Positions 670 to 63,574 of a stretch of DNA of 64,000 bases are shown piece after piece (within the stretch, counting starts at the first letter, position 1; each line of letters starts with the position of its first letter). A program made the position numbers and the translations under genes. Where the stretch lies: the IMG/VR virus record IMGVR_UViG_3300023174_000046, positions 1-64,000 of that record. One strand, given 5' to 3'. The notes beneath the pieces were generated by a model. That model saw only the letters and a program-made list of their open reading frames with translations. It was not told the DNA's origin and searched no databases.

Positions 670-697
670 TTGCTTTAAACCCAACTTCCCGTATAAT
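670..697 (+). promoter_or_regulatory. sigma70-type early promoter, leaderless
   Basis: TTGCTT-N16-TATAAT-N6-ATG(704). Confidence 0.7.
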
Positions 698-703
698 AGT
701 AGT

Positions 704-937
704 ATGATGAATGAAGTAGCAGCAACAAGTGAAGAGACCACCGCGTACGCCTTAGGGTCTACGATTGGTACTCTTCTTAACTTAAAGCGAATGGTCGAGC
801 AGAACATGACCGACTATTCCAATAACCTAGAAGGTATGCGTGGGTTGCATCCCATGTGGTCTAAGAGTGAGTTGATGGATCAGTTTGATCGAGCCATCAA
901 TAAGCTCAATACCATTACATACCCTTACAAATATTAA
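704..937 (+). CDS. hypothetical early protein (start moved to ATG 704)
   Basis: in frame with track ORF 629..937; ATGATGAAT start shared with genes at 28 and 2124. Confidence 0.7.
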   Translation: MMNEVAATSEETTAYALGSTIGTLLNLKRMVEQNMTDYSNNLEGMRGLHPMWSKSELMDQFDRAINKLNTITYPYKY

Positions 938-950
938 AGGAGATACAATT

Positions 951-1208
951 ATGAGTACAACAGAAGAGACAACAGGCCATGAAGCACCCTACAACGCTGA
1001 CCTGCATTGCAAGAAGATTGCATGGATGGTTAAGCACAGTCCTGACTGGGACTATGAGACACAAACCCTTGAACAGTATCTGGAGACCGTACCTGAGTAT
1101 CCCACTGATGAACAGGTCAAGGACTTCAATCATCTGTACGTGGCACCTTTCGTGCCTTTTAAGAAAGAGATCCCATTCAAAGGAGATGAAGTAAATGAAG
1201 CATCGTAA
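951..1208 (+). CDS. hypothetical protein
   Basis: AAGGAGA SD 7 nt before ATG 951. Confidence 0.65.
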   Translation: MSTTEETTGHEAPYNADLHCKKIAWMVKHSPDWDYETQTLEQYLETVPEYPTDEQVKDFNHLYVAPFVPFKKEIPFKGDEVNEAS

Positions 1209-1398
1209 TCACTTTGATCAAAACGGAGACCTACGAGACATCTTTGCAGCACTTGCCATGCAGAGCTTAATGAACCAAGGCACACCTGTACCCAAGTGGG
1301 TGGCAGCACAAGCATACCGATACGCTGACGCTATGCTTGATGTAAGAGATGAAGTCAGCCATAATGATAACAACAAGGAGACATTGATCAATGAGTAA
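1195..1398 (+). CDS. small conserved phage protein (LRDxFAAxAMQ...AYxxADAML family)
   Basis: LRDIFAALAMQ and AYRYADAMLDVR motifs typical of a widespread phage family; AAGGAG SD. Confidence 0.75.
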   Translation: MKHRNHFDQNGDLRDIFAALAMQSLMNQGTPVPKWVAAQAYRYADAMLDVRDEVSHNDNNKETLINE

Positions 1399-2080
1399 CA
1401 CAACTAACATCACAGGAGAGGTGACCAATCACCTGGTAACAGCATTTGAATTCTTTAACAAGGCATTGGGTACAAATTTAGATACCCCAGTCTTTACCCT
1501 GATCCCCAACCGTGGTCGTCAAAGCTACTATGGATGGTATTGGCAGGGACGATGGAAGGATGGTAAGAAGACTCTACCTGAGATTAATATTACCGCTGAT
1601 ACATTGAAGCGCTCGGTAGAGGACATCTGTGAGACTATCATCCACGAGATGGTGCATTACAAGAACAACGTACTGGACATTGTAGATTGTAATGCTAACC
1701 AATACCACAACAAAGCGTTTAAAAAGCGTGCAGAAGAGTTTGGCTTGAAGGTAGAGAAGGTTAAGAACAAAGGCTATGCTCGTACCGCTTTGGATGAGAA
1801 AGCATCTGAGTTGGTTAAGAAGTACAAGAAGACGGTACTCAAGTCAGAGAAGAATCCCTTCCATGCATACAGGGTAACCGAGGAGCGTATTAGCATTGTG
1901 AAGAAGAATGGCAAGCGCTTCATTGCCATTGATGCTACATTGGCTGAACAAGCCGAGGATCAATATGATGGTGGTACATTGCGTGAGCTAGTGGAGCACC
2001 TGCTACAGAGTTATGTGTCAGAGGGCATGGTGCTACCACATGGTAGTGATGCCCGTCACCCTGTAGACGAGATCGCCTAA
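1391..2080 (+). CDS. SprT-like zinc metalloprotease domain protein
   Basis: HEMVH (HExxH) followed by YHNKAFKKRAEEFGL. Confidence 0.8.
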   Translation: MSNTTNITGEVTNHLVTAFEFFNKALGTNLDTPVFTLIPNRGRQSYYGWYWQGRWKDGKKTLPEINITADTLKRSVEDICETIIHEMVHYKNNVLDIVDCNANQYHNKAFKKRAEEFGLKVEKVKNKGYARTALDEKASELVKKYKKTVLKSEKNPFHAYRVTEERISIVKKNGKRFIAIDATLAEQAEDQYDGGTLRELVEHLLQSYVSEGMVLPHGSDARHPVDEIA

Positions 2081-2088
2081 CATTGATA

Positions 2089-2117
2089 TTGACTGCACGT
2101 TACTAACCATATACAAT
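2089..2117 (+). promoter_or_regulatory. sigma70-type early promoter, leaderless
   Basis: TTGACT-N17-TACAAT-N6-ATG(2124). Confidence 0.7.
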
Positions 2118-2123
2118 AGGAGT

Positions 2124-2420
2124 ATGATGAATGCAACGAATGATTACAAGACAATACCTTCTGTCTTTAAGAAGAAGGGCTTTACTTATACACAACTCAA
2201 GCGTGAAGGTAACAGGGCCATCTTCCAACAGACCAGAGAAGGATCTAGTTTAAACAACTATGAGGTGGTGAAGATTGGAAAGCATAATGGCTACTTGATG
2301 GGTGGGGTGATGATTGAGCCAGCTGAGACCTATCCAGGAAGTTCGTTGTGGGGTATTACAGGATGGACTTGTACGAGTATTGATGATGCGATGAAGAGGT
2401 ATGATGACCTTGTCAGCTGA
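2124..2420 (+). CDS. hypothetical early protein
   Basis: 98-aa ORF directly after promoter. Confidence 0.75.
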   Translation: MMNATNDYKTIPSVFKKKGFTYTQLKREGNRAIFQQTREGSSLNNYEVVKIGKHNGYLMGGVMIEPAETYPGSSLWGITGWTCTSIDDAMKRYDDLVS

Positions 2421-2896: not shown

Positions 2897-2924
2897 TTGC
2901 ATCTGTTAACGTTCCCCGTATAAT
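2897..2924 (+). promoter_or_regulatory. sigma70-type promoter, leaderless
   Basis: TTGCAT-N16-TATAAT-N7-ATG(2932). Confidence 0.7.
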
Positions 2925-2931
2925 AGTACAT

Positions 2932-3087
2932 ATGGCAAACATAATCAGACATGCAAATAACCATGGCAACAAGACCCTGGCCCGTCAGTTCCGCGAGGCT
3001 ACCATTCGTCCTATTAAGTCTATAGGAGCACGGCACAAACCTGCATATCGTGCGCAACGGTCCGATTTTGGCAAGAAGCGCACATGA
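2932..3087 (+). CDS. 51-aa highly basic protein (not in ORF track)
   Basis: MANIIRHANNHGNKTLARQFREATIRPIKSIGARHKPAYRAQRSDFGKKRT; own promoter; ATGA overlap with next ORF. Confidence 0.65.
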   Translation: MANIIRHANNHGNKTLARQFREATIRPIKSIGARHKPAYRAQRSDFGKKRT

Positions 3088-9711: not shown

Positions 9712-9735
9712 ATGTTTTCTTTATAAATAATATAA

Positions 9736-10794
9736 ATGCCTATCAAAAAATACGTTAGCCTTGAGTCCAAACTCAATGAGGTTTTGAAATTGTCTAATAC
9801 AAGAGTGCTGTTTGTAAGAGAAGACGCTACTGTTTTGATTCAAAAAGATCAAGCAAAAAACGTGGACGAATTTAGAGTACCAGATGCTACAGCAGATAAA
9901 TTAAAAAAAGAAATACGTGATTCTACATATGAAGGTCAAATACAGACCTTTCTTGCAAGTAAAAATTACACCGCAAAAGCTTTTCAAGGCAAAGGATTCA
10001 ATTTACTATTAGCAACAATTTTTGAAAGCAGTGATGAAGATCTCAAAAAATTTGTTGAATTTATTGATTCAAATAATGATTTAAAATTTGCCGAACACCC
10101 TGCTGATAATGTTGCAACATTGGCTCGTAGCAAAGGATTACCAGACACATTAATAAACAATTTATCCAACCTAAATGAATTGAGAGATGCAGGTGGCAAT
10201 AGCGTTGGTCCAGGCGAAATTTTATTCGCAATTGTGTTTAGCGATATTTTAAACAGTGTTACTGGTGGTGACTTGCAGTATGGTGACAAGAAGGTTGAAG
10301 TAAAAAAGAACGGTGGACATTTTGGACAGCAAGCAGGTCGCGGTGGAATGAAGTTGCTTAAGACTCTTTTTGTGGAGCCTTTCATACGTAACCCTGACAA
10401 ATTAAAGCAAATTGATAAGAGTTTAAATATTAGATTGGGTGATATTTTACTTGCTAGCTATAGAGCTGTTGATAACAAACAAGAGTTTGTTAATTTTGCA
10501 ATCAAGACATTAAACAGCATTTATGCAAATAATGCTCCGCTAGCTGAAAAATACTTTAATGAAGAGTTGTTTCGTTCTGGTGATGCAAAGCAAATAACTA
10601 ACGCGTTATTAAAACTAAACACAGATGGTTATCTGAAGAGCGATTTTGTAATGTTCATTGATAAGAACTATAACTATGTTGTTTCAACAAAAGAAGATTT
10701 AATTAAACCGGACGGCTACATTGATGCAGGCAAAGTTAAAACAATGGGCAATTTTACAATCAATGATCTGTATCCCAAGATCGGTATAAAATGA
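9736..10794 (+). CDS. PD-(D/E)xK nuclease-fold protein
   Basis: GPGEILF...GDL...KKVEVK motif; TATAAATA upstream. Confidence 0.55.
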   Translation: MPIKKYVSLESKLNEVLKLSNTRVLFVREDATVLIQKDQAKNVDEFRVPDATADKLKKEIRDSTYEGQIQTFLASKNYTAKAFQGKGFNLLLATIFESSDEDLKKFVEFIDSNNDLKFAEHPADNVATLARSKGLPDTLINNLSNLNELRDAGGNSVGPGEILFAIVFSDILNSVTGGDLQYGDKKVEVKKNGGHFGQQAGRGGMKLLKTLFVEPFIRNPDKLKQIDKSLNIRLGDILLASYRAVDNKQEFVNFAIKTLNSIYANNAPLAEKYFNEELFRSGDAKQITNALLKLNTDGYLKSDFVMFIDKNYNYVVSTKEDLIKPDGYIDAGKVKTMGNFTINDLYPKIGIK

Positions 10795-15648: not shown

Positions 15649-15685
15649 CTCTTGAACTTTACATCTCTTGGTTTATCATAAAATG

Positions 15686-16126
15686 GTGAAACATTTTATA
15701 ACTTGGGATATATTTGATGGCTATATTGATCAACTCTCGCAAAAAATAAAAGAAAATATAGACACCGCAGATTACGATATTGTTGGTATCTCACGAGGTG
15801 GTTTGATTCTTGCTGCAGCACTTGGCTATGCATTAAAAATAAAAAATGTTTATAGTGTTGGTGTAAGAAGCTATTCAAATAATGACGTTCAAGATGAAAT
15901 AGAGGTGTATCAGCATCTGAATCTTGGAAATTTAAAGCGTAATTTATTAGTAGTTGACGATGTATCGGATACAGGCAATACATTTTTATATCTACAGAAA
16001 CTGTTGTCAGATAAAGAATTTATAACTGTAAGTCTTGCTGTGAAGGATAAAACAAAGTGTGTTTCCGATTACAGTGCATTGCGACTAAATTCTGATATTT
16101 GGATAGTATTTCCGTGGGATAAGTAG
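15686..16126 (+). CDS. type I purine phosphoribosyltransferase (Gpt/Hpt-like)
   Basis: GISRGG, LVVDDVSDTGNT PRPP loop, WIVFPW; start ATG 15683 or GTG 15686 after TTGAAC-N16-TATCAT. Confidence 0.85.
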   Translation: MKHFITWDIFDGYIDQLSQKIKENIDTADYDIVGISRGGLILAAALGYALKIKNVYSVGVRSYSNNDVQDEIEVYQHLNLGNLKRNLLVVDDVSDTGNTFLYLQKLLSDKEFITVSLAVKDKTKCVSDYSALRLNSDIWIVFPWDK

Positions 16127-19815: not shown

Positions 19816-19852
19816 CCTGTTGATATATCTTATCCGTAACTATAATAGGGTT

Positions 19853-20413
19853 ATGGTAAATGTACTTGAAAGTGCGAGCAAAGCTTTATCGATAGATAAA
19901 TTTGTTGCTCTGGATAAAGTTGATACCGGTTCTTTGTTTTATGGTATCATACTCCGGAGCGAGTTCGATATCGAGCGTATTGACATAAACAAAAAATATT
20001 TACCTAAACAATTTTATGCTATTGCTAAAACCGAAAAAGATTATGGCATAGTTTATCTATATGGATCTTTTTTAAAAATTAAAAACAAATATAAAGACCT
20101 TCTTACTAATTTAGATTCTTTTTATCATTTGCCGAAAACTCATACAGAAGCAAATTACAAAAAAATACTTTCTATTTATGGCTTGAGTTGTGATGAAACA
20201 TATAGATTTTTTTCGCAAGGAATTTATCCGATGGATTCGGAATGTAGAGAAAATATTTTTCATGAAAAAATTAACTTTAATGACTATTTTAAAGGTAATA
20301 GTGAATATCCTTTTTTTCTCACCATTGTTTCACCGGTTATTTTTTATTTTTCGAACGTAGAACAAAATATTTTAGATTTTAAAAATTATCTTCAGTCAAA
20401 CACAAGACTGTAA
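19853..20413 (+). CDS. hypothetical protein
   Basis: TATAAT-N6-ATG 19853, in frame with track ORF. Confidence 0.65.
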   Translation: MVNVLESASKALSIDKFVALDKVDTGSLFYGIILRSEFDIERIDINKKYLPKQFYAIAKTEKDYGIVYLYGSFLKIKNKYKDLLTNLDSFYHLPKTHTEANYKKILSIYGLSCDETYRFFSQGIYPMDSECRENIFHEKINFNDYFKGNSEYPFFLTIVSPVIFYFSNVEQNILDFKNYLQSNTRL

Positions 20414-42903: not shown

Positions 42904-42912
42904 TATTGTACA

Positions 42913-43833
42913 ATGAATACAGAATTAGATAATAGTAATATTTCAAAGCATTTAGGCAAAATTACCGGGTACAAGTGTACATATGATCCTTCACTTCTGG
43001 TTCGCGAGCCAAGACAAAATAATAGAAAGCATTTGAAAATTTCTGATGAAAATCCGCCTTTCTGTGGCTATGATGTTTGGAATGCTTATGAAGTGTCTTG
43101 CTTGACTCAAGAGGGCATGCCCATTGCTGCTATTGCTAAAGTTGTTTACCCTGCTACTAACAAATATATTGTTGAATCAAAGTCCATTAAACTGTACATG
43201 AATTCGTTTAATATGGAGACATATCAAGGCAATATTATTAGTGTACTGCAGCAGCTTGAAGCTGTAATGGAGAATGATCTTTCTAAATTGCTTGAAACTG
43301 AAGTTAGAGTATGTGTCAGGCTTACTAAGGCCATTGATGATGCAATGTATTACCCAGCATTGTTTCCTTCTGCGTTGTATCCAACGCTTGAGAATAATAT
43401 TGATGTAACGACTATTAAATCGCGTGGCTACAAAGAAGATCCTAAATTACTTGGTTGGTTGGAAGGTGACAGTAGCAAAGTGCAGCGCTTTCATTCAGCT
43501 CTATTAAAGAGTAATTGCAGGGTCACATCTCAACCGGACTGGGGGGATGTTTATATTCATTACAAAGGACCTTATGAACTCAATCAAACATCTCTATTGC
43601 AGTACATTGTTTCGTTTAGAGATGAATGTCATTTTCATGAAGAGATTTGTGAAACGATTTACAAGCGTCTTTATGATTTGACCAAGCCTGAAGAACTGAT
43701 GGTATCTTGCTTATATGTAAGACGGGGTGGTATTGATATTAATCCTATTAGAGCTAATAGTCAGGAACTACTCAAGCAGAACGGTGCCATGTGGGACAAG
43801 TGGAAGTACTTTACTAAGACAGTAAGACAGTAA
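42913..43833 (+). CDS. queF: NADPH-dependent preQ0 reductase (two-domain QueF)
   Basis: DVWNAYEVS, VESKSIKLY.NSF, LLKSNC.VT.QPDWG, FHEEICE, RRGGIDINP.R. Confidence 0.93.
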   Translation: MNTELDNSNISKHLGKITGYKCTYDPSLLVREPRQNNRKHLKISDENPPFCGYDVWNAYEVSCLTQEGMPIAAIAKVVYPATNKYIVESKSIKLYMNSFNMETYQGNIISVLQQLEAVMENDLSKLLETEVRVCVRLTKAIDDAMYYPALFPSALYPTLENNIDVTTIKSRGYKEDPKLLGWLEGDSSKVQRFHSALLKSNCRVTSQPDWGDVYIHYKGPYELNQTSLLQYIVSFRDECHFHEEICETIYKRLYDLTKPEELMVSCLYVRRGGIDINPIRANSQELLKQNGAMWDKWKYFTKTVRQ

Positions 43834-46983: not shown

Positions 46984-47658
46984 TTATCCTACGAGAGTCA
47001 TTTTTTTGAAGAAATTTGATATTTGTTCCTTCAGATATGACTCCACATCCACTTTGGGTAGTTTGTTTAGTTTGTTAGAGAACGTTTCATATACTTCAGC
47101 ATACTTGCCATCTGCTTCCAGAACAAACTGTTTGGATTCAAGAATACCATTGACAAAAGCCTTGGGAAACGATGGATCTGCAACACAATCAATTGCGACT
47201 AAACGCATTTCTGTAACACGTTGCACACCACTATCTTGTTCTTCTAATTTGCCAAGAGCACGTGATGACATGCCAACTTTAACACCATCATTCACAAGAG
47301 AACGCACAATCATTCCCATGGGTGTGGTTAAAACTTTTGACTTGCCGTAAAATACATTACCATCTTGTCTGAGTTCAGTGACAAGGTGGCATGCTCTCTC
47401 CAGATCAACATCAGCAGTTGTTGGGTGATTCAATTCTCCCATTGCACGGTTATTCTTAATAAGCTCGTTACTGTAACGGGTTACTTCACGTGCCATCTCA
47501 TTTACATCATATACTCTGTTGTTTTTATTAACACCTTCTGCCATCATGTATGGGCCGTTAATATACAGGGTAGCAGGTCCTTTGGAATTTTTCTCCTCTA
47601 AAACATACTCAAATTGTTCTTCAGGAGCAGGTTTTTCTACCAATAGTTTTAGAGCCAT
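46984..47658 (-). CDS. gp21: prohead protease (T4 gp21 family)
   Basis: N.N.RVY, GELNHP, TPMG, GMSSRALG, D.VADPS.P.AFV.GILE. Confidence 0.95.
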   Translation of the reverse strand: MALKLLVEKPAPEEQFEYVLEEKNSKGPATLYINGPYMMAEGVNKNNRVYDVNEMAREVTRYSNELIKNNRAMGELNHPTTADVDLERACHLVTELRQDGNVFYGKSKVLTTPMGMIVRSLVNDGVKVGMSSRALGKLEEQDSGVQRVTEMRLVAIDCVADPSFPKAFVNGILESKQFVLEADGKYAEVYETFSNKLNKLPKVDVESYLKEQISNFFKKMTLVG

Positions 47659-47696
47659 AATATTATTTATACTTTTATCGGTATAATTTTAGTGTG

Positions 47697-48449
47697 TTAT
47701 GTGTACAAAATACCTGAAACAATCGCTTTACCACTTAGAGAAGTCATATTGCCAGTGCCTATTGCATATGCTGTTTCCACGCGCAAATACAACGTTGATG
47801 ATGCTGCAGTAGTAGATTGTCGACTTACCGTTGTTTGCGGCCGGGCATATTGATTGACGGCACTCGGAGTGCTGGCTAGAGAGAAAGGTGTAACTGAACC
47901 ACACATTTGATTGGCAAGAGCTGTCGCACTGTTTGAATTGTAAACTCGATAAGCAGGCACCGTATCACCAGTATTAAATGCGCCGGTAATTGCATCAATT
48001 GTAAAAATAAGATCATTCATTACAAATCGCGCGCCAGCGGGTGTAGTGCCAATATTAGTGTATGTTGCTGCTGCTGCCAAATAATTTATAGTGTCACTTA
48101 CAAATATTATTGGTCTAGGCACTGATAAGCTAAGAGCGGGATTTGCTGCTACACCATCACCGTCACTTACTGAAACACCATTAGATGCAGTTATTGTGCG
48201 TGCTGCTACTGTGCCTGCTGCAGTTCTAGTTATGAGACCGTTTGTACCAAGATTGTGCAGTGCTAGTGCTTGACCGGATAAAGCTATAGAGGGGCTAGTG
48301 GCCACACCGTCACCGTTAGTTACTGCGACACCAGTGCCGCTTGATATGGTTCTGCCCGCTACTGTGCCAGCGCCAGTTCTAGTTATGATACCGTTTGTGC
48401 CTAGATTGTGTAATGCTAACGCTTGACCTGTTAATGATATTTGACCCAT
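47697..48449 (-). CDS. fibre-like protein with two ~51-aa repeats
   Basis: GQALALHNLGTNG.ITRT.AGTVA.RTI...GV.V..GDGVA..P twice. Confidence 0.65.
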   Translation of the reverse strand: MGQISLTGQALALHNLGTNGIITRTGAGTVAGRTISSGTGVAVTNGDGVATSPSIALSGQALALHNLGTNGLITRTAAGTVAARTITASNGVSVSDGDGVAANPALSLSVPRPIIFVSDTINYLAAAATYTNIGTTPAGARFVMNDLIFTIDAITGAFNTGDTVPAYRVYNSNSATALANQMCGSVTPFSLASTPSAVNQYARPQTTVSRQSTTAASSTLYLRVETAYAIGTGNMTSLSGKAIVSGILYT

Positions 48450-48464
48450 ATAGTTATTTATCTA

Positions 48465-50093
48465 TTATATGATTCTATCAATAAAGTATTTTGGTAATCT
48501 ATCTTTGTGTGTTTTTATAACGTCGACTATATTTCCGTCCAGAATATATGTCACAGAATAATCGTTCTTACTTCTTGTGGCTCTTCCTGTTGCTTGAACC
48601 ATGGCATTTAACATCTTATCAATGTACCAGTTCTTATCCAATTCAAACAACTTCTTAACTCTCTTGGAAGATAATGGTAGGTATGGTAATTTAACTATAA
48701 TTTGAAATCTTGCTAATTCATCCTTAAGATCTATGCCAAAAGATAGTGATGGTGACACAAGAACAGTAGGTTTACTGCTTGAGGAATGCTCTTTGAGAAT
48801 ATCTTCATTTTTTGAAGCAAGCTCTCGAAAGAGAAATCTTTCCCCATTCAATCTGGTCTTTATATATTCTGTGATCTCCATGGTGTGGGTATGTATAACG
48901 CCTTTTGCATCTTTATGGAAATCACAAATTTGCTTAATCTTATTAACTATTTCCGGCAATTCTGTTTTTATAGTTTTATAGTTTAACTTGTTTTTAGATG
49001 TTACATATATGGGTGACTTGGATGATTCAAAAGTAGAGTCAACTTCCACATACTCGTAATCTTTTATACCTAGCGTTTTTGCAAAATTCTTGTGATCAAT
49101 AATTGTAGCGGACATTAATAAAATATTTTCACCATAATCAAAAATATATTTTGACAATTTATCTACCTTTAATGGTGTAAATGATGCGCGTTGCGAATCT
49201 TTCTCTACAACAAATTCACACTCATCCCATAATGATTCGATAATTACTAAGTTGTTGTAAAGGTTTTTCAAATAACGAATTTTAATTTTATCTATTGGTG
49301 ATAAATTAGTAATTTTTTTTGTTTGTCTATTTTGTAAAGTGTTTATTATCTCGCTAAGATGAAAAATGAGATCATACAGCCACACACGAACCTTTTGTGT
49401 ACTATCTGTAACAAGCGGTACAACACTTACATCATAATTCTTTAATTTATCATATTCTATAAATGCAGAAAATCGTCTTACTAGCTCGTCTTCTAATTCA
49501 GATGCCTCATCACATATAATAAAGTTTTTTCTTTTTACATGATCCGGGAGCGACAAAAACATTTTATAATTTAAAATAGAAAATTTATCTGTAAGTGCAG
49601 TATTTCTTGCGGTATAATACGGGCATATATTCTTTGACCAACAATCTTCTTTAAGCTTATTGACCAACACACATGGGGCTGATTCTACATCAAAATTTGT
49701 ATCGACTTGACACTGATAGTTTGTCTTGCCTTTCAAAAGTTTACCATCTTCAAAAAGCTTCACATATTGATCTTGTAAAGATTTTGTTATAGTAAGTGTG
49801 AAGGTTCCAAAAGCTGGCTCTTTTCTTGCATCAGCTTCATGTGTATAATTGCCACTATAATCTTGTCTAAATGCATCGTAACTGTTAATTAAATTAACAT
49901 ATGCAGATGTAGGCGGTGAACTTAAGTTGGCTAATGTTTTGCCGAGAAAGCTTTTTCCAGTACCTGTAGGTGCACAACAAATTACAAATTTTTTTCCTCT
50001 CGCAAAAGCTTTCTCAACACCATTAATGAGCTGTATCTGGCTCTTGCTTGGTGTGTAGTCTTGAGGGAAATATGAAACTAGTTTCTTCTGCAC
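48465..50093 (-). CDS. DinG/XPD-family SF2 helicase
   Basis: APTGTGKS, LKGKTNYQC and further Cys, DEA, MSAT, GIDL, K.PY, Q..GR..RS..D. Confidence 0.9.
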   Translation of the reverse strand: MQKKLVSYFPQDYTPSKSQIQLINGVEKAFARGKKFVICCAPTGTGKSFLGKTLANLSSPPTSAYVNLINSYDAFRQDYSGNYTHEADARKEPAFGTFTLTITKSLQDQYVKLFEDGKLLKGKTNYQCQVDTNFDVESAPCVLVNKLKEDCWSKNICPYYTARNTALTDKFSILNYKMFLSLPDHVKRKNFIICDEASELEDELVRRFSAFIEYDKLKNYDVSVVPLVTDSTQKVRVWLYDLIFHLSEIINTLQNRQTKKITNLSPIDKIKIRYLKNLYNNLVIIESLWDECEFVVEKDSQRASFTPLKVDKLSKYIFDYGENILLMSATIIDHKNFAKTLGIKDYEYVEVDSTFESSKSPIYVTSKNKLNYKTIKTELPEIVNKIKQICDFHKDAKGVIHTHTMEITEYIKTRLNGERFLFRELASKNEDILKEHSSSSKPTVLVSPSLSFGIDLKDELARFQIIVKLPYLPLSSKRVKKLFELDKNWYIDKMLNAMVQATGRATRSKNDYSVTYILDGNIVDVIKTHKDRLPKYFIDRII

Positions 50094-50106
50094 GTACTAA
50101 TTGTAG

Positions 50107-50445
50107 TTATAAGAACTCAATGATCAAGGTATTATCGTAAAATTTTGAAAATTTCTGTCTCTTTAACAGCTTAATAATAGTTTCCAACTCTTTGTCTTTT
50201 TTTGTGAGTGTGCTATTCGTGTAGTCAAAAAATAGTTTATTCTCTTCAAATCTATATGTATAGGGGTAAGGTATTTCAATATACTTGTATGCATTGTGTC
50301 CTACACAGAGTTTAAAATGAAGATAGAATTCTTTGAACGAAAAGAGTATTAGCTTTCCCTCTCTCAATGTCTTGTTATTAACCCTAAATCTAAGATTTTT
50401 TTGAAAGATTGAAGAGACGTCTTTTTCTAAATTTAAAATGCTCAT
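50107..50445 (-). CDS. hypothetical protein
   Basis: 112-aa ORF in operon. Confidence 0.65.
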   Translation of the reverse strand: MSILNLEKDVSSIFQKNLRFRVNNKTLREGKLILFSFKEFYLHFKLCVGHNAYKYIEIPYPYTYRFEENKLFFDYTNSTLTKKDKELETIIKLLKRQKFSKFYDNTLIIEFL

Positions 50446-51575: not shown

Positions 51576-52159
51576 TAACTAATAACTTTAGTTGTAGCAA
51601 TAAAGATATCGTCGTTAAGATTATAAAACAGATTAATAATTTCTGCCATGAAGTTATTGGCTTGCTCGTCGGTAAGATTTGTTGAGTAAGCAAAAGCGGG
51701 TGCCTTCTTACCTGCTGCAATATTAATACCGGTATGACCAAGCGCAACATTATTCTTTGTGTATGTGATGCTTACGCTACATTTACCTTTTGGTTGTGCA
51801 ATACCACCTTGTGTATGTTCTTTATGCACAATTAAATCGTCGCCTTTCATTTCAATAGGAGCTTTGAGATATTGTGTAGAGAGAATATTAGCAATCTGAG
51901 TATTTAAAAGTCTTTGATAAGCTACAGCACCAAACGCATCAAGGTTAGGAATTTCCCAAAGAAAATTAATTGCATCATCACTGTAGATATAATCTGCATT
52001 GAGAATATCCTCACTATCAATCATACCTTCTGCTTCAACTTTCATGGGCGATCTGAATGCAATGATATTACCGATCGGTAATGTTTTTTCTCGGAAAAAC
52101 TTATATGCAAATCGTGAATGCAGCAATGACCCGTCGTATATTTTTTGATTAATAATCAT
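51575..52159 (-). CDS. DUF366 family protein (biotin/lipoate-ligase-like fold)
   Basis: YDGS.L...FAY, M.D.ED, I.S.D...F..EIP, QRL, GDDL, K.SVSI, H.GINI; TTGATA-N16-TATTAT-N6-ATG. Confidence 0.7.
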   Translation of the reverse strand: MIINQKIYDGSLLHSRFAYKFFREKTLPIGNIIAFRSPMKVEAEGMIDSEDILNADYIYSDDAINFLWEIPNLDAFGAVAYQRLLNTQIANILSTQYLKAPIEMKGDDLIVHKEHTQGGIAQPKGKCSVSITYTKNNVALGHTGINIAAGKKAPAFAYSTNLTDEQANNFMAEIINLFYNLNDDIFIATTKVIS

Positions 52160-52189
52160 TAGCTTATAATACTATCTCAAACTTGAATA

Positions 52190-53185
52190 TCAACTCTTTT
52201 CTATTTGCGATTTAATCCAAGAATAAGTCTTTTTTAACCCTTCTGCGAGAGGGTAATTTGGCTGCCAATTTAACTTTTCGCCAATTAATTTATTGCAAGA
52301 ATTTCTGCCCCTTACACCAGTAGGACCATCTAATTTATAATTTTTTGTAATTTTCTTGTTTTCAATGGAGCATGCTAAATCAACTAATTGGTTAATTGTC
52401 ACGCGCTCTTCTGAGCCAATATTGACTGGTCCGAGAAAGTTTGATTCCATCAACCGACGGATACCTTCAACACATTCATCTATATATAGAAATGATCTGG
52501 TCTGCTCACCGTCACCCCAAATTTCAATATCACCAGTTGATTCTAAGACTTTGCGACAAATTGCAGCAGGCGCTTTCTCCTTGCCACCCTTCCATGTTCC
52601 TTGAGGACCAAAAATATTATGAAAGCGTGCAATACGCACATCAATGTTATAATTTCTGTTGTAAGCAAGGTAAAGCCGTTCGCTAAAGAGTTTTTCCCAC
52701 CCATATTCGCTGTCGGGGTTTGCTGGGTAGGCGCTGCTTTCCTCACAATTGGGATTATTTGGATCAAGTTGATTGTGTTCAGGATACATGCAAGCGCTAC
52801 TGCTATAAAATATTTTCTTTAAACCCACATCAACAGCTTCATCTAGAACGTTTAAATTAATTGTTGCAGAATTATGCATCACATCAGCATCATGTGCACC
52901 AGTAAAGATGTAACCTGCTCCGCCCATATCTGCTGCAAGCTGATACACTTCATCAAACGATGTATGGTGCGTGTGCGTGTAATAGTGCCAAGATTTATCC
53001 ATTGCTTTGCGTACGTTGTCACGCTCTCTTAAATCCAAAATAAAGAATTGATCTGCTTGTGTGGAAGAATATTCAGGATATTTTAAATCTACACCACGTA
53101 CAAAATATCCCTCGCTTTTTAATCTTGTAACTAAATGGTTACCAATAAAACCACCTGCGCCTAAAACTAATGCACTTTTTTTCAT
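52190..53185 (-). CDS. NAD-dependent sugar epimerase, GDP-mannose 3,5-epimerase-like
   Basis: GAGGFIG, LAADMGGAG, SSACMYP, YGWEK, GGKEKAPAA.CRK, GVRGRNS. Confidence 0.9.
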   Translation of the reverse strand: MKKSALVLGAGGFIGNHLVTRLKSEGYFVRGVDLKYPEYSSTQADQFFILDLRERDNVRKAMDKSWHYYTHTHHTSFDEVYQLAADMGGAGYIFTGAHDADVMHNSATINLNVLDEAVDVGLKKIFYSSSACMYPEHNQLDPNNPNCEESSAYPANPDSEYGWEKLFSERLYLAYNRNYNIDVRIARFHNIFGPQGTWKGGKEKAPAAICRKVLESTGDIEIWGDGEQTRSFLYIDECVEGIRRLMESNFLGPVNIGSEERVTINQLVDLACSIENKKITKNYKLDGPTGVRGRNSCNKLIGEKLNWQPNYPLAEGLKKTYSWIKSQIEKS

Positions 53186-53772
53186 ATTTTTGTTATTAAG
53201 GAGATTTCTTTATTACCGTCATGGTTTGAGATGTGAGCCTTCTTTTTAATGTTGTATTTTTTTAACGGAAAGAAGTCACATGAGAGTGGTCTGCTACGCA
53301 ATGGCATGTCTTGCCAATCGTCCTTCTGATCGCAACTATTGGTTATAAGAATGTAGTTAAAATTAGCAATAGCACGATCTAGAAAATAAACAATTTCGTC
53401 ACATAACCAATGCTGTATTACATCTTTTAGTAAAAGTAAATCACCTGTATAGTTAAAAAAGTTTTCAATTTGCTCAATATATTCAAAGCGAATATTAGGT
53501 GCACTGTAAGTTGAATTGTGGTGGTCGATCAAGCTCTTTACACAGTCGATGCCTAGATAATTTACACTGGACCAGTCAATAAGGCGTGAAAACTGCCAAT
53601 CACCACACCCATAATCAGTTACAGTTTTAATATTATTTTTTTGTATAAAATCTGTAATAAATTTTCTATAACCTACAGTATGTTCTGGATAAGAGCCAGA
53701 ACCTGAACCATTCCACTCGTTTGTGTCGTAAATCCTTGTAAAATGGTTAATATGTGATTTGTGATCGAGCAT
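53182..53772 (-). CDS. class I SAM-dependent methyltransferase
   Basis: SGSGS, DYGCGD, YLGID, KDVIQH. Confidence 0.85.
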   Translation of the reverse strand: MLDHKSHINHFTRIYDTNEWNGSGSGSYPEHTVGYRKFITDFIQKNNIKTVTDYGCGDWQFSRLIDWSSVNYLGIDCVKSLIDHHNSTYSAPNIRFEYIEQIENFFNYTGDLLLLKDVIQHWLCDEIVYFLDRAIANFNYILITNSCDQKDDWQDMPLRSRPLSCDFFPLKKYNIKKKAHISNHDGNKEISLITKI

Positions 53773-53798
53773 TATGATATGTTATAATATATTTGTTA

Positions 53799-54593
53799 TT
53801 AATCAATAGATATTAAATTGGCGTAATAATTGAACATGGCCTTTTCTCTTGAGTTTTTAATTAAAGTGTCGTATTTTGTTTCTAAAAACTCTTCTGTTAT
53901 TTCTTCAAAAGAATTTACAAACAAAATAGGCAGGTCAGTAAAATAATCTAAAGCGGTGTGATTCTCTACTATAGGAATCACATTTAAATATATTGCTTCC
54001 CAAATTCGATGACAGTCAATACTGTTGCCTGGTGGCGACACAACATACTTATATGCTTTAAGCTTAGTAAGATAATCTTTATATTGATGAATTTCTGTAT
54101 CTATATTAATAAATGTCTTAGTTTTTAAAATATTGAGAATATTTTGTCGCTTAAGCAGGTTAGTTGAAATATTAAAATTACTATAAACGAGTTTTGTTTT
54201 TTTAATAGGTGTATTGATCACATCTAATAAAGCATTCTTGTCACCGTGCGGCCACTTCTCATTAGCTATGCCGATGGGTATTGGTTGCAATTTATCGTGC
54301 TTAATGTGGCAATTCATGGCATGCCATTTAATGAGGTTATTGCTGTTTAAGATGTTTAGGTATTCTTCTGTAATCCAAAGATCGGAATTATGTGTAATAA
54401 GTTTAAAGGTATAGTCAATTCGGGGTAGTACTTTTTCGGCAAAAATTTTTAACCAATCTGTATATAAAAATATAATTTTGGGTTTGTTTGCAAGATTTAC
54501 AAGCGGCTTGCTCTCATCTATATATTCTGAAGCTAGAGCTTTAAAACTATTACCTGATATAATATCTTCTATACTGATAGGTGTTACTAACAT
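53799..54593 (-). CDS. exostosin/GT47-like glycosyltransferase
   Basis: THNSD, PIPIG, SPPGN.IDCHR.WEA.YL..IPI. Confidence 0.75.
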   Translation of the reverse strand: MLVTPISIEDIISGNSFKALASEYIDESKPLVNLANKPKIIFLYTDWLKIFAEKVLPRIDYTFKLITHNSDLWITEEYLNILNSNNLIKWHAMNCHIKHDKLQPIPIGIANEKWPHGDKNALLDVINTPIKKTKLVYSNFNISTNLLKRQNILNILKTKTFINIDTEIHQYKDYLTKLKAYKYVVSPPGNSIDCHRIWEAIYLNVIPIVENHTALDYFTDLPILFVNSFEEITEEFLETKYDTLIKNSREKAMFNYYANLISID

Positions 54594-57869: not shown

Positions 57870-58630
57870 AATGATTTAAAATATTCAATGACCTTTTCAA
57901 GGCCATCATAACTCTGGCTAGGGTTTGTAACATCAACGTTATGTTTTTGCTTAAATCTCTCTACACCTTTTCTAAAATTTTCCACCCAATTACCTTTTCT
58001 TATAGTAGATTTATCGTGATGGTAGTCTTGATCAACAATGTATTGATTGCTATTCTCTAGGTCAATAAACCATCGAAAGGGCGGGTGATATTTGTGGTTT
58101 ATAGCAATCATTGTATGATCGACATGTTCCATAGCATTAATATACTCTTCATCTAGTAATCCGATCTCTTCAAAAACTGATCTATGATAGTAACTACATG
58201 CACCGTATACATTGAAGTATAGTGCAACTCTCTGGCCTCTTATTTCAAAAATTTTACGAGGATTAGGTGTGTTATTTTGTTTGTTGTCTTGACCGTGTAA
58301 ACAGTAGTTGAAATGCTTCACTTTAGTTTTTTTGCTAGCTTCTATGTATGCTTCAAATGCATTCTGAAGAAAAATAACATCATCTTCAACAAGGAAGATA
58401 TGTTCACAGCCTCTCTCTAAGAGAAATTTTATTGCTTTATTCTTTGACTTGCCAACACCTTGATTTACTTCATTATTAATAATATTCATCCCAGACTGTT
58501 CAATTCTCTGAATCCCGTCATTTATAATAACCAATTCATCATACCAGTCCTTATTGAGACTTTTAATACATTTCTTAAGAAAAGCAGGCCGATCACAGGT
58601 TACAATGCCTACACCTATTTTCTCTTTCAT
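57866..58630 (-). CDS. GT2 glycosyltransferase
   Basis: VTCDRP, INDG, N.GV...KN, LVEDD, IGLLDE, EHVD. Confidence 0.85.
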   Translation of the reverse strand: MKEKIGVGIVTCDRPAFLKKCIKSLNKDWYDELVIINDGIQRIEQSGMNIINNEVNQGVGKSKNKAIKFLLERGCEHIFLVEDDVIFLQNAFEAYIEASKKTKVKHFNYCLHGQDNKQNNTPNPRKIFEIRGQRVALYFNVYGACSYYHRSVFEEIGLLDEEYINAMEHVDHTMIAINHKYHPPFRWFIDLENSNQYIVDQDYHHDKSTIRKGNWVENFRKGVERFKQKHNVDVTNPSQSYDGLEKVIEYFKSL

Positions 58631-58637
58631 CTTTGAT

Positions 58638-58665
58638 ATTATATATTAAATAATTGAAATGTCAA
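58638..58665 (-). promoter_or_regulatory. consensus sigma70 promoter with a divergent late promoter nested in its spacer
   Basis: minus strand TTGACA-N16-TATAAT-N7-ATG(58630); plus strand TAAATA 58647-58652, 6 nt before ATG 58659. Confidence 0.75.
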
Positions 58666-61097: not shown

Positions 61098-61098
61098 A

Positions 61099-61848
61099 TT
61101 ATACTTTAAGAGCTTTATCCCAGATTACAAGCTGCAAGCGTGGGCTAAAATTAAACATATGTTTCTTGCACAACTCTGCAACCATTGGTGCTTTTTCAGC
61201 TAATTCAGCTCTACTGCCGCAGCAAGGCATCAACCATACACGGTTTTTCGGTACATTAATATCCGGATTGTGTATATATTTCTCGAGAATTTCATCCACA
61301 TCAGCTTCATTACTAACAACAAATTTAAACCCTGAACCATTCTCCGCATGCCACTTTAAAACAGCTGGCTTGTATCTCTTTTCAACAGGATCCCCGTTAT
61401 TAGCCAATTTTGGTGATGTAGTGAATGTTGCTTTAAATTCGTTACCCCACGCTTCATCAGGAAGAATTGTTGCGTTAGTTTCAAAATCAATAACAGGTAC
61501 ATAACCAAAGCGCTCTGCATATGCACGCACAAGCTTAAGCAATTGTTTTTGCTGTATGAGTGGTTCACCACCAGTAATCTTCCATATTGCACCATCATGC
61601 AGCTTACAATTGTAAGCATTCTGAGCCATAAATTCAAAAATTTCGTCAAATGTCATTCTGTTCTTTACAGACCAACTGACAAAACTATCACAACCATGAG
61701 GTGCATCTGCTGATTTGAATCCTTGACATGTTAAGTTACACATTGAAAGACGCATAAAAACAGAAGGTATACCTGCATATTCACCTTCTCCTTCTACAGT
61801 ATAAAAGATTTTATCATCACTTAAAAAGATTGTATTTTCGTTATCCAT
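61099..61848 (-). CDS. queE: 7-carboxy-7-deazaguanine synthase
   Basis: FYTVEGEG...G.PSVF.R...CNL.C...CDS, ITGGEP, ETN.T, SPKL, KFVV, RLQ...W. Confidence 0.92.
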   Translation of the reverse strand: MDNENTIFLSDDKIFYTVEGEGEYAGIPSVFMRLSMCNLTCQGFKSADAPHGCDSFVSWSVKNRMTFDEIFEFMAQNAYNCKLHDGAIWKITGGEPLIQQKQLLKLVRAYAERFGYVPVIDFETNATILPDEAWGNEFKATFTTSPKLANNGDPVEKRYKPAVLKWHAENGSGFKFVVSNEADVDEILEKYIHNPDINVPKNRVWLMPCCGSRAELAEKAPMVAELCKKHMFNFSPRLQLVIWDKALKV

Positions 61849-61898
61849 TTCAATATTATATCATACTTCTTGCAGAAATAAAGCATAAATAATTATAG

Positions 61899-62642
61899 AT
61901 GTCGAAAAAAGACAGACAGCTTAAAAAAGCTGCAAAACAGGCAAAAGACGAAAACGGAATCATTAAAAACGATATCTTTCTTAATTTTAAGATTGATCAG
62001 AAGTTTCATTTTAATGAACATCATAAGAGTTTTGTAGATAAAGGCCTAGCGGACGAATCACACATACTATTTTGCGACGGTCCTGCAGGATCTGCAAAAA
62101 CATACTGTGCAGTGTATGTGGCACTAACGCTTTTAAAAGAAAAGAAGATAGATGAAATTGTTTATATCCGTAGCATAGTAGAGTCTGCTACCAGAAAATT
62201 GGGTAGTTTGCCAGGTGAAGCTGATGAAAAATTTAAACCATGGAGCATACCGTTAGTAGAGAAATGTGATGAGCTTGTTGGCAAACAAATAACAAATATG
62301 CTGTTTGACAGTGATTATCTTAAATGTACACCAGTAAATTTTCTAAGAGGATCAACATTCTCAAACAGTGTGGTAATAGTTGATGAAGCTCAAAATCTCG
62401 AACATAGTGAGCTTGTGACAATATTAACAAGATATGGTAAAAACTGTAAATTGTTTGTAATTGGAGATTCTTTACAATCTGATATTCAGAAATCAGGTTT
62501 TGAGAAGATAATGAAAGCTTTTGATACCAATGAAAGTGGTAATAATGGTATTCATGCCTTTCATCTAACAGAAGAAGATATCACACGCAGTAAATTGCTC
62601 AAGTTTATTGTTAAAGTAATTGCAAATATCAAGTCAAAATAA
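61899..62642 (+). CDS. phoH: PhoH-family protein
   Basis: GPAGSAKT, LG.LPG...EK, FLRG.TF, DEAQN, GD..QSD. Confidence 0.92.
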   Translation: MSKKDRQLKKAAKQAKDENGIIKNDIFLNFKIDQKFHFNEHHKSFVDKGLADESHILFCDGPAGSAKTYCAVYVALTLLKEKKIDEIVYIRSIVESATRKLGSLPGEADEKFKPWSIPLVEKCDELVGKQITNMLFDSDYLKCTPVNFLRGSTFSNSVVIVDEAQNLEHSELVTILTRYGKNCKLFVIGDSLQSDIQKSGFEKIMKAFDTNESGNNGIHAFHLTEEDITRSKLLKFIVKVIANIKSK

Positions 62643-62840
62643 TTATTCGAGCTGTTTTAGCTCTTCAAGTGCCTTGCGAATATTTTCTCGCGCCTCTGTA
62701 CTGTAGCCAGTTTGTTGATTATTGATATTTAATATTGGTGTTGTAAGAGGTTTTTTTCCACCATCAACAATTTCACTCATTTTGCCAAAAACATCCGATT
62801 TTAATTTTTGTAGAACTGGATCTTTCTCTTTATGTACCAT
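62643..62840 (-). CDS. hypothetical protein
   Basis: 65-aa ORF abutting queD. Confidence 0.55.
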   Translation of the reverse strand: MVHKEKDPVLQKLKSDVFGKMSEIVDGGKKPLTTPILNINNQQTGYSTEARENIRKALEELKQLE

Positions 62841-63482
62841 TTAAACACTCCAAGATGTACCTGCAAAAGGATTGCTCATGCCTTTGGTAACTTTGGTACC
62901 AAGAGGTGCACCCATCTCAACGTTAATGCCTGCATTAACTACATTTACCTGCTCAAGTGATGGTTGTAATGTTGTTGCAATTGTATTGTTTGTAACCACA
63001 TGCTTATCAGAAGCATATGGGTTATGATCCGGTACATGTTGATAGCCTGAACTAACAATTGCAGAATTTTTATCATGCTCCCATACTTCAACCCTACTAA
63101 CCCAACATCTATTATTAGTTATGCCTCTTACATGCGCATCAGCTACATCATAACACCAGTCTGCTGTTCTCTCAATACCAACACCTTTGTCCATAACTCT
63201 TAGATCTGCAGCACCTAAGGTGTGTAAATTTTTAAAATGATCTAGCAAAGGATCATCAGCTGAAATGCATAATGTATGATCAAATTGATTTTCTAAGACT
63301 TGCTTAAGTTCCTTTAAACCACCAAAATCTACAACCCAGTTCTTTTCATCTAGATAATTACATTCAAACCAAAATTTTGCTATCAACCTGTATCCATGGA
63401 TATATTTGCAATGGCTGTCTGCTTTCCACTGTCTAAATGCACAACTTCCTAATTCAATTATCTTTGTACTTTCGTATTTCAT
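62841..63482 (-). CDS. queD: 6-carboxy-5,6,7,8-tetrahydropterin synthase
   Basis: SHC..IHGY, VVDFG.LK, FDH, G.E, V.V.E...NSA; TTGATT-N16-TATAAT-N6-ATG. Confidence 0.9.
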   Translation of the reverse strand: MKYESTKIIELGSCAFRQWKADSHCKYIHGYRLIAKFWFECNYLDEKNWVVDFGGLKELKQVLENQFDHTLCISADDPLLDHFKNLHTLGAADLRVMDKGVGIERTADWCYDVADAHVRGITNNRCWVSRVEVWEHDKNSAIVSSGYQHVPDHNPYASDKHVVTNNTIATTLQPSLEQVNVVNAGINVEMGAPLGTKVTKGMSNPFAGTSWSV

Positions 63483-63574
63483 GCTCTTATTATAACTACA
63501 CTTTTATATGAATCAACTCTCAACATACCAACTCTTTATATTACTGTATTATTATAACCGAATTCCAAAAAAAA

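What the first reader, a model, noticed from the sequence alone, without database searches (positions are those of the whole stretch)
670..63516. Early/middle genes appear leaderless, driven by sigma70 promoters with a fixed 16-bp spacer
Seen repeatedly: TTG(A/C)NN-N16-TANNAT-N6/7-start with no room for an SD. Examples are genes starting at 704, 2932, 15686 and 38139 on + and 50093, 52159, 53772, 58630 and 63482 on -. The tRNA and tmRNA promoters (26029, 31630, 34986) also have 16-bp spacers. The 17-bp spacer optimal in E. coli is the minority (2089, 40829). Inference: transcription starts at or next to the start codon, and the host RNA polymerase, or a phage-modified one, prefers 16 bp. Three early genes even share the start ATGATGAAT. 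The rule also corrects several start calls.
Basis: partly seen in the sequence, partly recalled or inferred. Interest (0 to 1): 0.6.

Follow-up and report, generated by a model that had tools for sequence, protein, structure and literature searches.

The report
Phage genes that start without leaders
In this 217-kb T4-like freshwater phage and its relatives, promoters sit so close to the start codons that about 40% of genes, early and late alike, should be made as messenger RNAs with no leader and no ribosome-binding site, which matters for calling gene starts in phages from metagenomes and for how such phages get translated.

Summary
All 11 cited gene starts and all 5 cited promoter coordinates have the stated layout. 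Genome-wide, TTG-N19-TANNNT-N6-ATG (16-bp spacer) occurs 25 times against 5.5±1.6 in shuffles. The 17-bp form gives 11 against 5.7, and a control with 12 nt before the ATG is at background.

About 60 of about 308 genes carry a sigma70-type promoter ending 5-8 nt before the start codon. Anchored on the -10 box, TTG lies at spacer 16 in 27 cases, 17 in 6 and 15 in 5. The spacer is preferred, not fixed.

The T4-type late box (A)TAAATA lies 5-6 nt before the start of about 65 more genes, and a gp55 late sigma is encoded. Three tRNA genes also have almost no leader.

The layout is conserved in about 60 relatives whose flanks have diverged, often with GTG as the start codon. The cyanophage P-SSM2 lacks it. 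Pelagiphage HTVC008M has only some late-type cases.

No RNA data exist, so the transcription start sites are inferred from promoter geometry. The host is unknown.

This is a new variant of a known kind: leaderless expression as in Actinobacteria, Deinococcus-Thermus and, from memory, Thermus phage phiYS40.

The parts
670..706 (+). sigma70-type promoter TTGCTT-N16-TATAAT-N6 and start ATG 704 (ATGATGAAT). An in-frame ATG at 629 lies upstream of the predicted transcript.
2089..2126 (+). promoter TTGACT-N17-TACAAT-N6 and start ATG 2124 (ATGATGAAT)
2897..2934 (+). promoter TTGCAT-N16-TATAAT-N7 and start ATG 2932
15652..15688 (+). promoter TTGAAC-N16-TATCAT-N6 and start GTG 15686. The in-frame ATG at 15683 is only 3 nt after the -10 box.
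19820..19855 (+). promoter TTGATA-N15-TATAAT-N6 and start ATG 19853, heading the ribonucleotide reductase operon
25022..25059 (+). promoter TTGATG-N16-TACAAT, 9 nt before the 5' end of tRNA-Thr (near-leaderless tRNA)
26029..26056 (+). promoter TTGCAT-N16-TAATAT of the tRNA cluster that begins at 26085
26859..26897 (+). promoter TTGAAA-N16-TATCAT, 10 nt before tRNA-Asn
31607..31645 (-). promoter TTGAAA-N16-TAATAT-N8 and start ATG 31609, heading the minus-strand operon that runs to 26977
31630..31657 (+). promoter TTGATT-N16-TATAAT of the tRNA cluster that begins at 31680
34986..35013 (+). promoter TTGCAT-N16-TATACT of the tmRNA gene (35036-35442)
38105..38141 (+). promoter TTGAAT-N16-TATAAT-N6 and start ATG 38139. 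The PHROG profile aligns from residue 3.
40829..40865 (+). promoter TTGATT-N17-TATAAT-N5 and start ATG 40863
42877..42915 (+). promoter TTGAAG-N16-TATAAT-N8 and start ATG 42913 (QueF)
50091..50127 (-). promoter TTGATC-N16-TACAAT-N6 and start GTG 50093 (helicase). The -10 box and the GTG/ATG start are kept in about 60 relatives.
52157..52193 (-). promoter TTGATA-N16-TATTAT-N6 and start ATG 52159
53770..53806 (-). promoter TTGATT-N16-TAACAT-N6 and start ATG 53772
58628..58665 (-). promoter TTGACA-N16-TATAAT-N7 (12 of 12 matches) and start ATG 58630 (glycosyltransferase; profile aligns from residue 1)
63480..63516 (-). promoter TTGATT-N16-TATAAT-N6 and start ATG 63482 (QueD-like)
9718..9738 (+). 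late-type box TATAAATA-N6 and start ATG 9736. This is one of 20 such late-type starts in the window. The others are at 3441, 3948, 4183, 8440(-), 12092, 13771, 16822, 18761(-), 20441, 24422, 25766, 32408, 44226(-), 46975(-), 47658(-), 48449(-), 58659, 60342(-) and 61899.
47656..47672 (-). late-type box TATAAATA-N5 and start ATG 47658 of the head maturation protease
48447..48465 (-). late-type box ATAAATA-N5 and start ATG 48449, placed just after the helicase stop codon. TAAATA-N4-7-GTG/ATG is kept at this junction in 33 of 35 distinct relatives.

Best explanation
The contig is a complete T4-like jumbo phage from lake water. It uses the host RNA polymerase and encodes none of its own.

Early and middle transcription units are read from host sigma70-type promoters: -35 TTGAnn, a spacer that is mostly 16 bp, and -10 TATAAT. 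The -10 box ends 6 nt (range 5-8) before the start codon. By the fixed geometry of bacterial promoters, transcription should therefore begin on the A of ATG or the G of GTG.

Late units are read from T4-type late promoters: (A)TAAATA with no -35 box, recognised by the phage gp55 sigma. These sit 5-6 nt before the start codon, which gives the same result.

The first gene of most units would therefore be a leaderless mRNA, translated from a 5'-terminal AUG or GUG without a Shine-Dalgarno site. This is inferred, not shown. Downstream genes mostly overlap or abut the gene before them and have A-rich, G-poor upstream regions. Only a small minority have a clear SD.

Shown here: the motifs, their spacing, their enrichment, their link to gene class, and their conservation. 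Inferred: the transcription start sites, the mode of translation initiation, and the role of the host.
For: Enrichment and spacing:
- The layout is enriched at spacer 16 and at 6 nt before ATG, and not at control distances.
- 60 sigma70-type and 65 late-type promoter-adjacent starts were found among about 308 genes of my own rough gene model.
- An SD core is present in 0 of 60 and 2 of 65 of these, against 4.8% of all ATGs.

Gene class:
- Sigma70-type promoters precede DNA polymerase, DnaB-like helicase, SSB, primase, and sugar and queuosine-pathway enzymes.
- Late-type promoters precede head protease, virion proteins, head-tail adaptor and tail fibre genes.
- gp55 is present. The late class has no -35 signal. 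No RNA polymerase gene was found.

Promoter rather than ribosome site:
- Promoters of the same form, with a 16-bp spacer, drive 6 untranslated RNA genes, so the motif is a promoter and not a ribosome site.

Conservation:
- The helicase start is kept across relatives, with synonymous changes from codon 2 on.
- The late junction after the helicase is kept in 33 of 35 distinct relatives.
- Five related genomes show the same counts against reversed controls.

Known rule:
- A -10 box 6-8 nt before a start is the accepted signature of leaderless genes (PMC6028130, PMC3160421, PMC12340547).
Against: - No transcription start site has been observed. Only DNA runs hold this phage.
- My gene model is home-made, and 11 of the 60 starts were chosen by the rule itself.
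- At the loosest threshold, about 2% of ordinary ATGs also pass, so a few of the 60 are chance matches.
- The generic promoter scan of 44-64 kb is only mildly above shuffles: 107 against 83±9.
- At least one strong promoter (63578-63551) has no start codon behind it.
- 5'-terminal GUG is a poor start in E. coli (my own knowledge). Several conserved starts are GTG, so the host must differ from E. coli.
Confidence: 0.8

Rival explanations
1. The AT-rich boxes next to the start codons (TATAAT-like and TAAATA) are translation signals on leadered mRNAs, like the A-rich non-SD sites of Bacteroidetes. On this reading they are not promoters, and transcripts start further upstream.
For: - The non-leaderless genes also have A-rich, G-poor upstream regions and almost no SD.
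- 26 of the 65 late-type boxes sit in gaps of only 1-15 nt between co-directional genes.
- The phage encodes a bS21-like protein. Phage bS21 has been proposed to tune initiation in Bacteroidetes hosts (PMC9723584).
Against: - A TTG exactly 16 bp upstream (27 of 72 anchors, against 0-6 at other spacings) has no role in translation.
- The same motif precedes tRNA and tmRNA genes.
- TAAATA is the T4 late box, and gp55 is present.
- In P-SSM2 the same box lies 21-29 nt upstream of the start.
- In relatives L064 and L074 the box moves upstream and an AGGAGG appears between it and the start, as expected of a promoter.
- ATAAATA is depleted genome-wide: 85 observed against 131 expected.
Confidence: 0.08
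2. The pattern is a by-product of AT-rich intergenic sequence together with start codons chosen to fit the rule.
For: - The genome is 36% GC.
- Loose consensus scans give many chance hits.
- 11 of the 60 starts were moved by the rule.
Against: - Annotation-free counts are 4-5 times the shuffle mean only at spacer 16 with 6 nt, and at TAAATA with 5 nt. Control distances are at background.
- 49 of the 60 starts are the first start codon of the ORF.
- The layout is conserved in diverged relatives.
- It is absent from the equally AT-rich P-SSM2 and, for the sigma70 class, from HTVC008M.
Confidence: 0.03
3. Transcripts do start at the boxes, but 1-3 nt before the start codon in many cases (distances of 7-8 nt). 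Many messages would then have very short leaders rather than none, and initiation might need a phage factor such as bS21.
For: - 15 of the 60 sigma70-type cases have 7-8 nt after the -10 box.
- Late boxes occur at 6-9 nt in 28 cases.
- Seven genes begin ATGATG, which would tolerate a shifted start. A second-codon ATG occurs in 6 of 60 against 4 of 248.
Against: - The mode is sharp at 6 nt (35 of 60) and at 5 nt (37 of 67 late-type starts).
- Leaders of 5 nt or less behave as leaderless by the usual definition.
Confidence: 0.09

Closest known systems
Leaderless ('TA-led', GeneMarkS-2 group C) genes of Actinobacteria and Deinococcus-Thermus (PMC3160421, PMC6028130, PMC12340547)
   Same: A TANNNT -10 box lies 6-8 nt before the start codon, with no SD, on the first genes of operons. 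An optional -35 box strengthens the promoter.
   Different: - Here it is a phage genome of 36% GC.
- A clear -35 TTGA box sits at 16 rather than 17 bp.
- Internal genes mostly lack SD, whereas group C genomes use SD for them.
- A second promoter class, specific to the phage, has the same layout.
Thermus phage phiYS40 (Sevostyanova et al. 2007, J Mol Biol 366:420; cited in PMC12340547). I could not read the paper, so its content is from my memory.
   Same: A large phage that relies on host RNA polymerase. As I recall, most of its middle and late transcripts are leaderless.
   Different: - phiYS40 is not T4-like and has no gp55-type late promoters.
- Its host phylum is known to use leaderless mRNAs, whereas here the host is unknown.
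- Here the early class is leaderless too.
T4-type late promoters (TATAAATA, gp55/gp33/gp45; PMC2988020) as used in T4-like cyanophages such as P-SSM2
   Same: - The same box at the -10 position, with no -35 box.
- A gp55 homologue is encoded.
- The box stands in front of structural genes.
   Different: In P-SSM2 the box lies 21-29 nt before the ATG and never at 5-6 nt. Here it lies 5-6 nt before the start, which leaves no leader.
Pelagibacter phage HTVC008M (T4-like, encodes bS21)
   Same: ATAAATA-N5-ATG occurs at 9 of 45 ATAAATA sites, and a bS21 gene is present.
   Different: - Its sigma70-type promoters prefer a 17-bp spacer (30 strict hits against 9 at 16 bp) and are not next to start codons.
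- Many of its genes have AAGGAG sites.
Single leaderless phage genes: lambda cI from PRM (PMC10491246)
   Same: An mRNA with a 5'-terminal AUG transcribed from a sigma70 promoter.
   Different: That is one regulatory gene in a genome otherwise led by SD sites. Here the layout is the default for transcription units.

Membership tests
Leaderless (TA-led) bacterial-type gene starts | -10 box (TANNNT) ending 6-8 nt before the start codon, more often than chance | tested here: met
   the mode is 6 nt; 25 observed against 5.5±1.6 in shuffles.
Leaderless (TA-led) bacterial-type gene starts | No Shine-Dalgarno sequence between the promoter and the start | tested here: met
   0 of 60 and 2 of 65 have an SD 4-mer core at -18..-4.
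Leaderless (TA-led) bacterial-type gene starts | Primary 5' end of the mRNA at the start codon (leader of 5 nt or less) | not testable with these tools
   no RNA run holds the sequence.
Leaderless (TA-led) bacterial-type gene starts | The promoter-adjacent codon is the true start of the protein | tested here: met
   - 49 of 60 are the first start codon of the ORF.
- PHROG profiles align from residues 1-3 for 38139, 58630, 63482 and the head protease.
- Codons 2-5 of the helicase are kept with synonymous changes.
This evidence is indirect. There is no proteomics.
sigma70-type -35/-10 promoters | TTGACA-like and TATAAT-like hexamers 17±1 bp apart | tested here: met
   both hexamers are present. 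The spacer mode is 16 (27 of 38 within spacers 15-17), not 17.
sigma70-type -35/-10 promoters | Acts in transcription independently of translation | tested here: met
   six tRNA or tmRNA genes are preceded by the same motif, all with 16-bp spacers. This is a positional inference only.
T4-type late promoters | TATAAATA-like box with no conserved -35 element | tested here: met
   the consensus is aATAAATAaT, with flat composition and no TTG peak upstream.
T4-type late promoters | Phage encodes the late sigma gp55 | tested here: met
   phrog_234 at E 1e-24; tblastn to annotated late sigma factors; the gene lies next to gp47/gp46-like genes. gp33 and gp45 were not identified.
T4-type late promoters | Stands in front of late (virion) genes | tested here: met
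   head protease, virion structural proteins, head-tail adaptor, tail fibre. Many of the late-class proteins have no family match.
T4-type late promoters | Usual layout with a leader that carries a ribosome site, as in P-SSM2 | tested here: not met
   5-6 nt here against 21-29 nt in P-SSM2. The box belongs to the family, but its placement is a variant.

The most novel reading that the evidence does not exclude
A whole lineage of T4-like freshwater phages has moved nearly every transcription unit onto zero-length leaders: early, middle and late units, and even some tRNAs. The lineage keeps 5'-terminal GUG starts. It may pair this with a phage bS21 and an odd tmRNA, so that remodelled host ribosomes favour leaderless or SD-less phage messages over host messages. 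On this reading the layout is a translation-takeover strategy rather than a passive copy of host habits.
Probability: 0.2. Interest if true: 0.8.

Novelty: new variant of a known kind. Interest (0 to 1): 0.55.

Why it matters
- **Gene calling.** Gene finders that expect an SD will misplace starts in this abundant family of lake phages. Three sigma70-type starts in the window and 11 genome-wide move under the rule.
- **Host prediction.** The layout is a sequence-only handle. The host should have a primary sigma that reads TTGA-N16-TATAAT and ribosomes that accept 5'-AUG and 5'-GUG. That argues against Bacteroidetes, whose sigma reads TAnnTTTG and where only 5.5% of mRNAs are leaderless (PMC9723704).
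- **T4 late promoters.** The gp55 late promoter, studied for decades in T4, can be fused directly to the start codon. Some cases of this are also visible in pelagiphage HTVC008M.
- **A testable question.** Does a phage gain selective translation by making its messages leaderless while carrying its own bS21?

Tried and rejected
- **Direct RNA evidence.** The one run search found 20 DNA holders, all lake or freshwater metagenomes, and no RNA run. I did not use read laying, because contigs cannot show 5' ends.
- **Close cultured relatives.** No DNA match, and no match to the 817-aa protein, in the phage collection. gp23 is only 34% identical to that of T4-like cyanophages.
- **Host.**
  - Two scans of the genome collection, with a helicase alignment and a bS21 alignment, found nothing.
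  - The bS21 word search and the Atlas search gave only viral clusters.
  - The exact-protein look-up gave only two metagenome contigs.
  - No WhiB and no T9SS sorting domain were found.
  - The Verrucomicrobiota idea could not be tested. One paper search on it gave nothing useful.
- **Phage RNA polymerase.** None found. The T7-type search had no positive control.
- **Shared box in RNA-gene leaders.** The TRGTTCTTTW box is not significant by count alone: 2 observed against 1.35 expected.
- **phiYS40 paper.** It could not be read.
- **Supplement of PMC6028130.** It is not held.


Full report
**What the sequence is**

The window is the first 64 kb of a single 217,413-bp contig of 35.7% GC. The contig is an IMG/VR record that CheckV rates as 100% complete. 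It comes from a JGI lake metagenome.

It carries these genes:
- a T4 gp23 major capsid protein, a T4-type scaffold protein and a head protease;
- ribonucleotide reductase, queuosine-pathway genes and a DEAD-type helicase;
- family B DNA polymerase, DnaB-like helicase, SSB and primase;
- 16 tRNA genes and a tmRNA gene.

The closest isolated phages are T4-like cyanophages, at only about 34% gp23 identity. Only freshwater and lake DNA runs hold the sequence.

**Check of the observation**

I tested enrichment in three ways.

1. *Without any annotation.*
   - TTG[AC]NN-Nx-TA[TC]AAT is at background for x = 13-15 and 18-21. It gives 30 against 8.8±2.5 at x = 16, and 20 against 9.2±3.4 at x = 17.
   - The distance from the -10 box to the next ATG peaks at 6 nt.
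   - The full pattern with spacer 16 and 6 nt occurs 25 times against 5.5±1.6. A control with 12 nt gives 7 against 5.8.
2. *With a home-made gene model of about 308 genes.*
   - 60 genes have TTGNNN-N15-18-TANNNT ending 4-9 nt before a start.
   - The spacers are 16 bp in 36 cases, 17 in 11, 15 in 9 and 18 in 4. The distance is 6 nt in 35 cases.
   - For promoters matching at least 9 of 12 positions, the distance to the first ATG is 5-8 nt in 44 cases. It is about 0-3 cases per position from 10 to 116 nt. So few strong promoters of this type in the genome lie further than 8 nt from the ORF's first ATG.
3. *Anchored on a good -10 box 5-8 nt before a start (72 anchors).* TTG lies at spacer 16 in 27 cases, 17 in 6 and 15 in 5. 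It lies at 0-6 at every other spacing from 10 to 25.

The generic scan tool is only mildly above shuffles (107 against 83±9). Its best hits are the cited promoters.

The late genes have the same layout, with a different promoter.
- (A)TAAATA, the core of the T4 late box, lies 5 nt (37 cases) or 6 nt (14 cases) before called starts, 67 cases in all.
- TAAATA-N5-ATG occurs 38 times against 8.8±3.1. The N11 control gives 7 against 8.3.
- ATAAATA is depleted overall: 85 observed against 131 expected. Of the 85 copies, 34 lie 5-6 nt before an ATG.
- This class shows no -35 signal.
- The phage encodes a gp55-type late sigma at 75107-75646, next to gp47/gp46-like genes.

The classes follow gene function.
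- Sigma70-type promoters precede DNA polymerase (GTG start), replicative helicase, SSB, primase, sugar enzymes, QueF and QueD.
- Late boxes precede head protease, virion proteins, head-tail adaptor and tail fibre genes.

Together, about 125 of about 308 genes (41%) begin directly behind a promoter box. Of the other 183 genes, 84 overlap or abut the gene before them.

**Shine-Dalgarno use is marginal**

An SD 4-mer core at -18..-4 is found in:
- 0 of 60 sigma70-type starts;
- 2 of 65 late-type starts;
- 25 of 183 other genes;
- 4.8% of all ATGs.

The G fraction upstream of non-leaderless genes is 0.09-0.21. Clear SD sites do exist, for example before the genes at 350, 1195 and 1391 in the GC-richer first 4 kb.

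**Why these are promoters and not ribosome sites**

- The same TTGNNN-N16-TANNNT motif precedes six RNA genes: tRNA-Thr, Gly, Asn and Pro and the tmRNA in the window, and tRNA-Ile outside it. For tRNA-Thr, Asn and Ile, the -10 box ends only 9-10 nt before the mature 5' end.
- In two relatives, the late box moves upstream and an AGGAGG appears between it and the start.
- No RNA polymerase gene was found, and gp55 is the only sigma-like hit. The early promoters must therefore be read by the host holoenzyme.

**Conservation**

A helicase search returned 80 IMG/VR loci at 58-99% identity.
- In about 60 distinct upstream regions, a TATAAT-like box sits 6-7 nt before the start. The start is GTG in most and ATG in some.
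- The flanks and even the -35 box differ between relatives. Codons 2-5 vary synonymously.
- At the junction after the helicase, TAAATA-N4-7-GTG/ATG is kept in 33 of 35 distinct relatives.

In five large related records:
- ATAAATA-N5-ATG occurs 11-21 times each, against 0-2 for the reversed pattern;
- the 16-bp sigma70 pattern with 6 nt before the start gives 34 hits against 0;
- the 17-bp pattern gives 8 against 0.

**Controls**

- In Prochlorococcus phage P-SSM2, ATAAATA lies 21-29 nt before starts and never at 5-6 nt.
- Pelagibacter phage HTVC008M has ATAAATA-N5-ATG at 9 of 45 sites. Its sigma70-type promoters favour 17 bp and are not next to starts, and many of its genes have AAGGAG.

The full layout is therefore specific to this lineage. 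The late-type part of it is shared in part with a pelagiphage.

**Mechanism**

By established promoter geometry, +1 falls about 7 nt after the -10 hexamer. For T4 late promoters it falls about one helical turn after the TATA box (PMC2988020). Here that position is the A or G of the start codon, with T at -1 in about half of the cases. A -10 box 6-8 nt before the start is the accepted signature of leaderless genes (PMC3160421, PMC6028130, PMC12340547).

Translation from a 5'-terminal AUG or GUG is inferred. The conserved GTG starts imply a host unlike E. coli in this respect (my own knowledge).

**The host remains unknown**

- The promoter type argues against Bacteroidetes, which use a TAnnTTTG box and have 5.5% leaderless mRNAs (PMC9723704).
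- T4-like morphology argues against monoderm Actinobacteria (my own knowledge; a weak argument).
- Nothing I could run bears on Verrucomicrobiota.

**Verdict**

No transcription start site has been measured.

This is a new variant of known leaderless expression: a T4-like phage family in which both the host-type and the gp55-type promoters are fused to start codons.

Noticed in passing
window 25022-25059, 26859-26897; G000 about 190550-190587: tRNA-Thr, tRNA-Asn and tRNA-Ile have 16-bp-spacer promoters whose -10 box ends 9-10 nt before the mature 5' end. Their primary transcripts would have almost no 5' leader for RNase P to remove.
   Followed up: partly
window 26067-26076, 31661-31670, about 35019-35028: The leaders of the tRNA-Gly cluster, the tRNA-Pro cluster and the tmRNA share a (T)RGTTCTTTW box 7-10 nt before the mature 5' end. 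The count alone is not significant (2 against 1.35 expected).
   Followed up: partly
window 35036-35442 (tag frame 35121-35222): The one-piece tmRNA scores 91 bits in Rfam, but ARAGORN does not call it. The only open frame in its message part would give a 33-residue tag that ends ELELV rather than the usual ALAA.
   Followed up: partly
G000 89399-89602 (L081:1456-1656): A bS21-like ribosomal protein gene of 67 aa that ends KWKFY. It lies among replication genes, not head genes. Its nearest relatives are all viral.
   Followed up: partly
window 28, 704, 2124; G000 202623, 204768, 205449, 207435: Seven small early genes begin ATGATGAA, preceded by GT or GG. They are not detectable paralogues. 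A second-codon ATG is enriched behind sigma70-type promoters (6 of 60 against 4 of 248). It may serve as a fail-safe for a shifted transcription start.
   Followed up: partly
window 63551-63578 (-): A second strong promoter (TTGATT-N16-TATAAT) lies 62 nt upstream of the leaderless one for the QueD-like gene. No start codon follows it. It is either a tandem promoter that gives a leadered transcript or the promoter of a small RNA.
   Followed up: no
L064 and L074, just after the helicase stop: Two relatives replace TAAATA-N5-GTG with TAAATA...AGGAGG-N7-ATT. This is a leadered form with an SD site and apparently an ATT start codon.
   Followed up: no
window 1-4000: This stretch is 43% GC against 32-44% (mostly 33-37%) for the rest of the window. 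It holds small genes, the strongest early promoters (which share the spacer AACCCAACTTCC with relatives) and the few clear SD sites. The promoter of the gene at 28 is cut off by the end of the contig.
   Followed up: partly
window 38139-43833 and 62841-63482: QueF, a QueD-like protein, a radical-SAM/SPASM protein and a GMP-reductase-like enzyme suggest that the phage makes a 7-deazaguanine base, perhaps to modify its DNA.
   Followed up: no
HTVC008M (L084-L086): The cultured pelagiphage HTVC008M has its late box 5 nt before the ATG of at least nine genes. I did not find this described in the papers I searched.
   Followed up: partly
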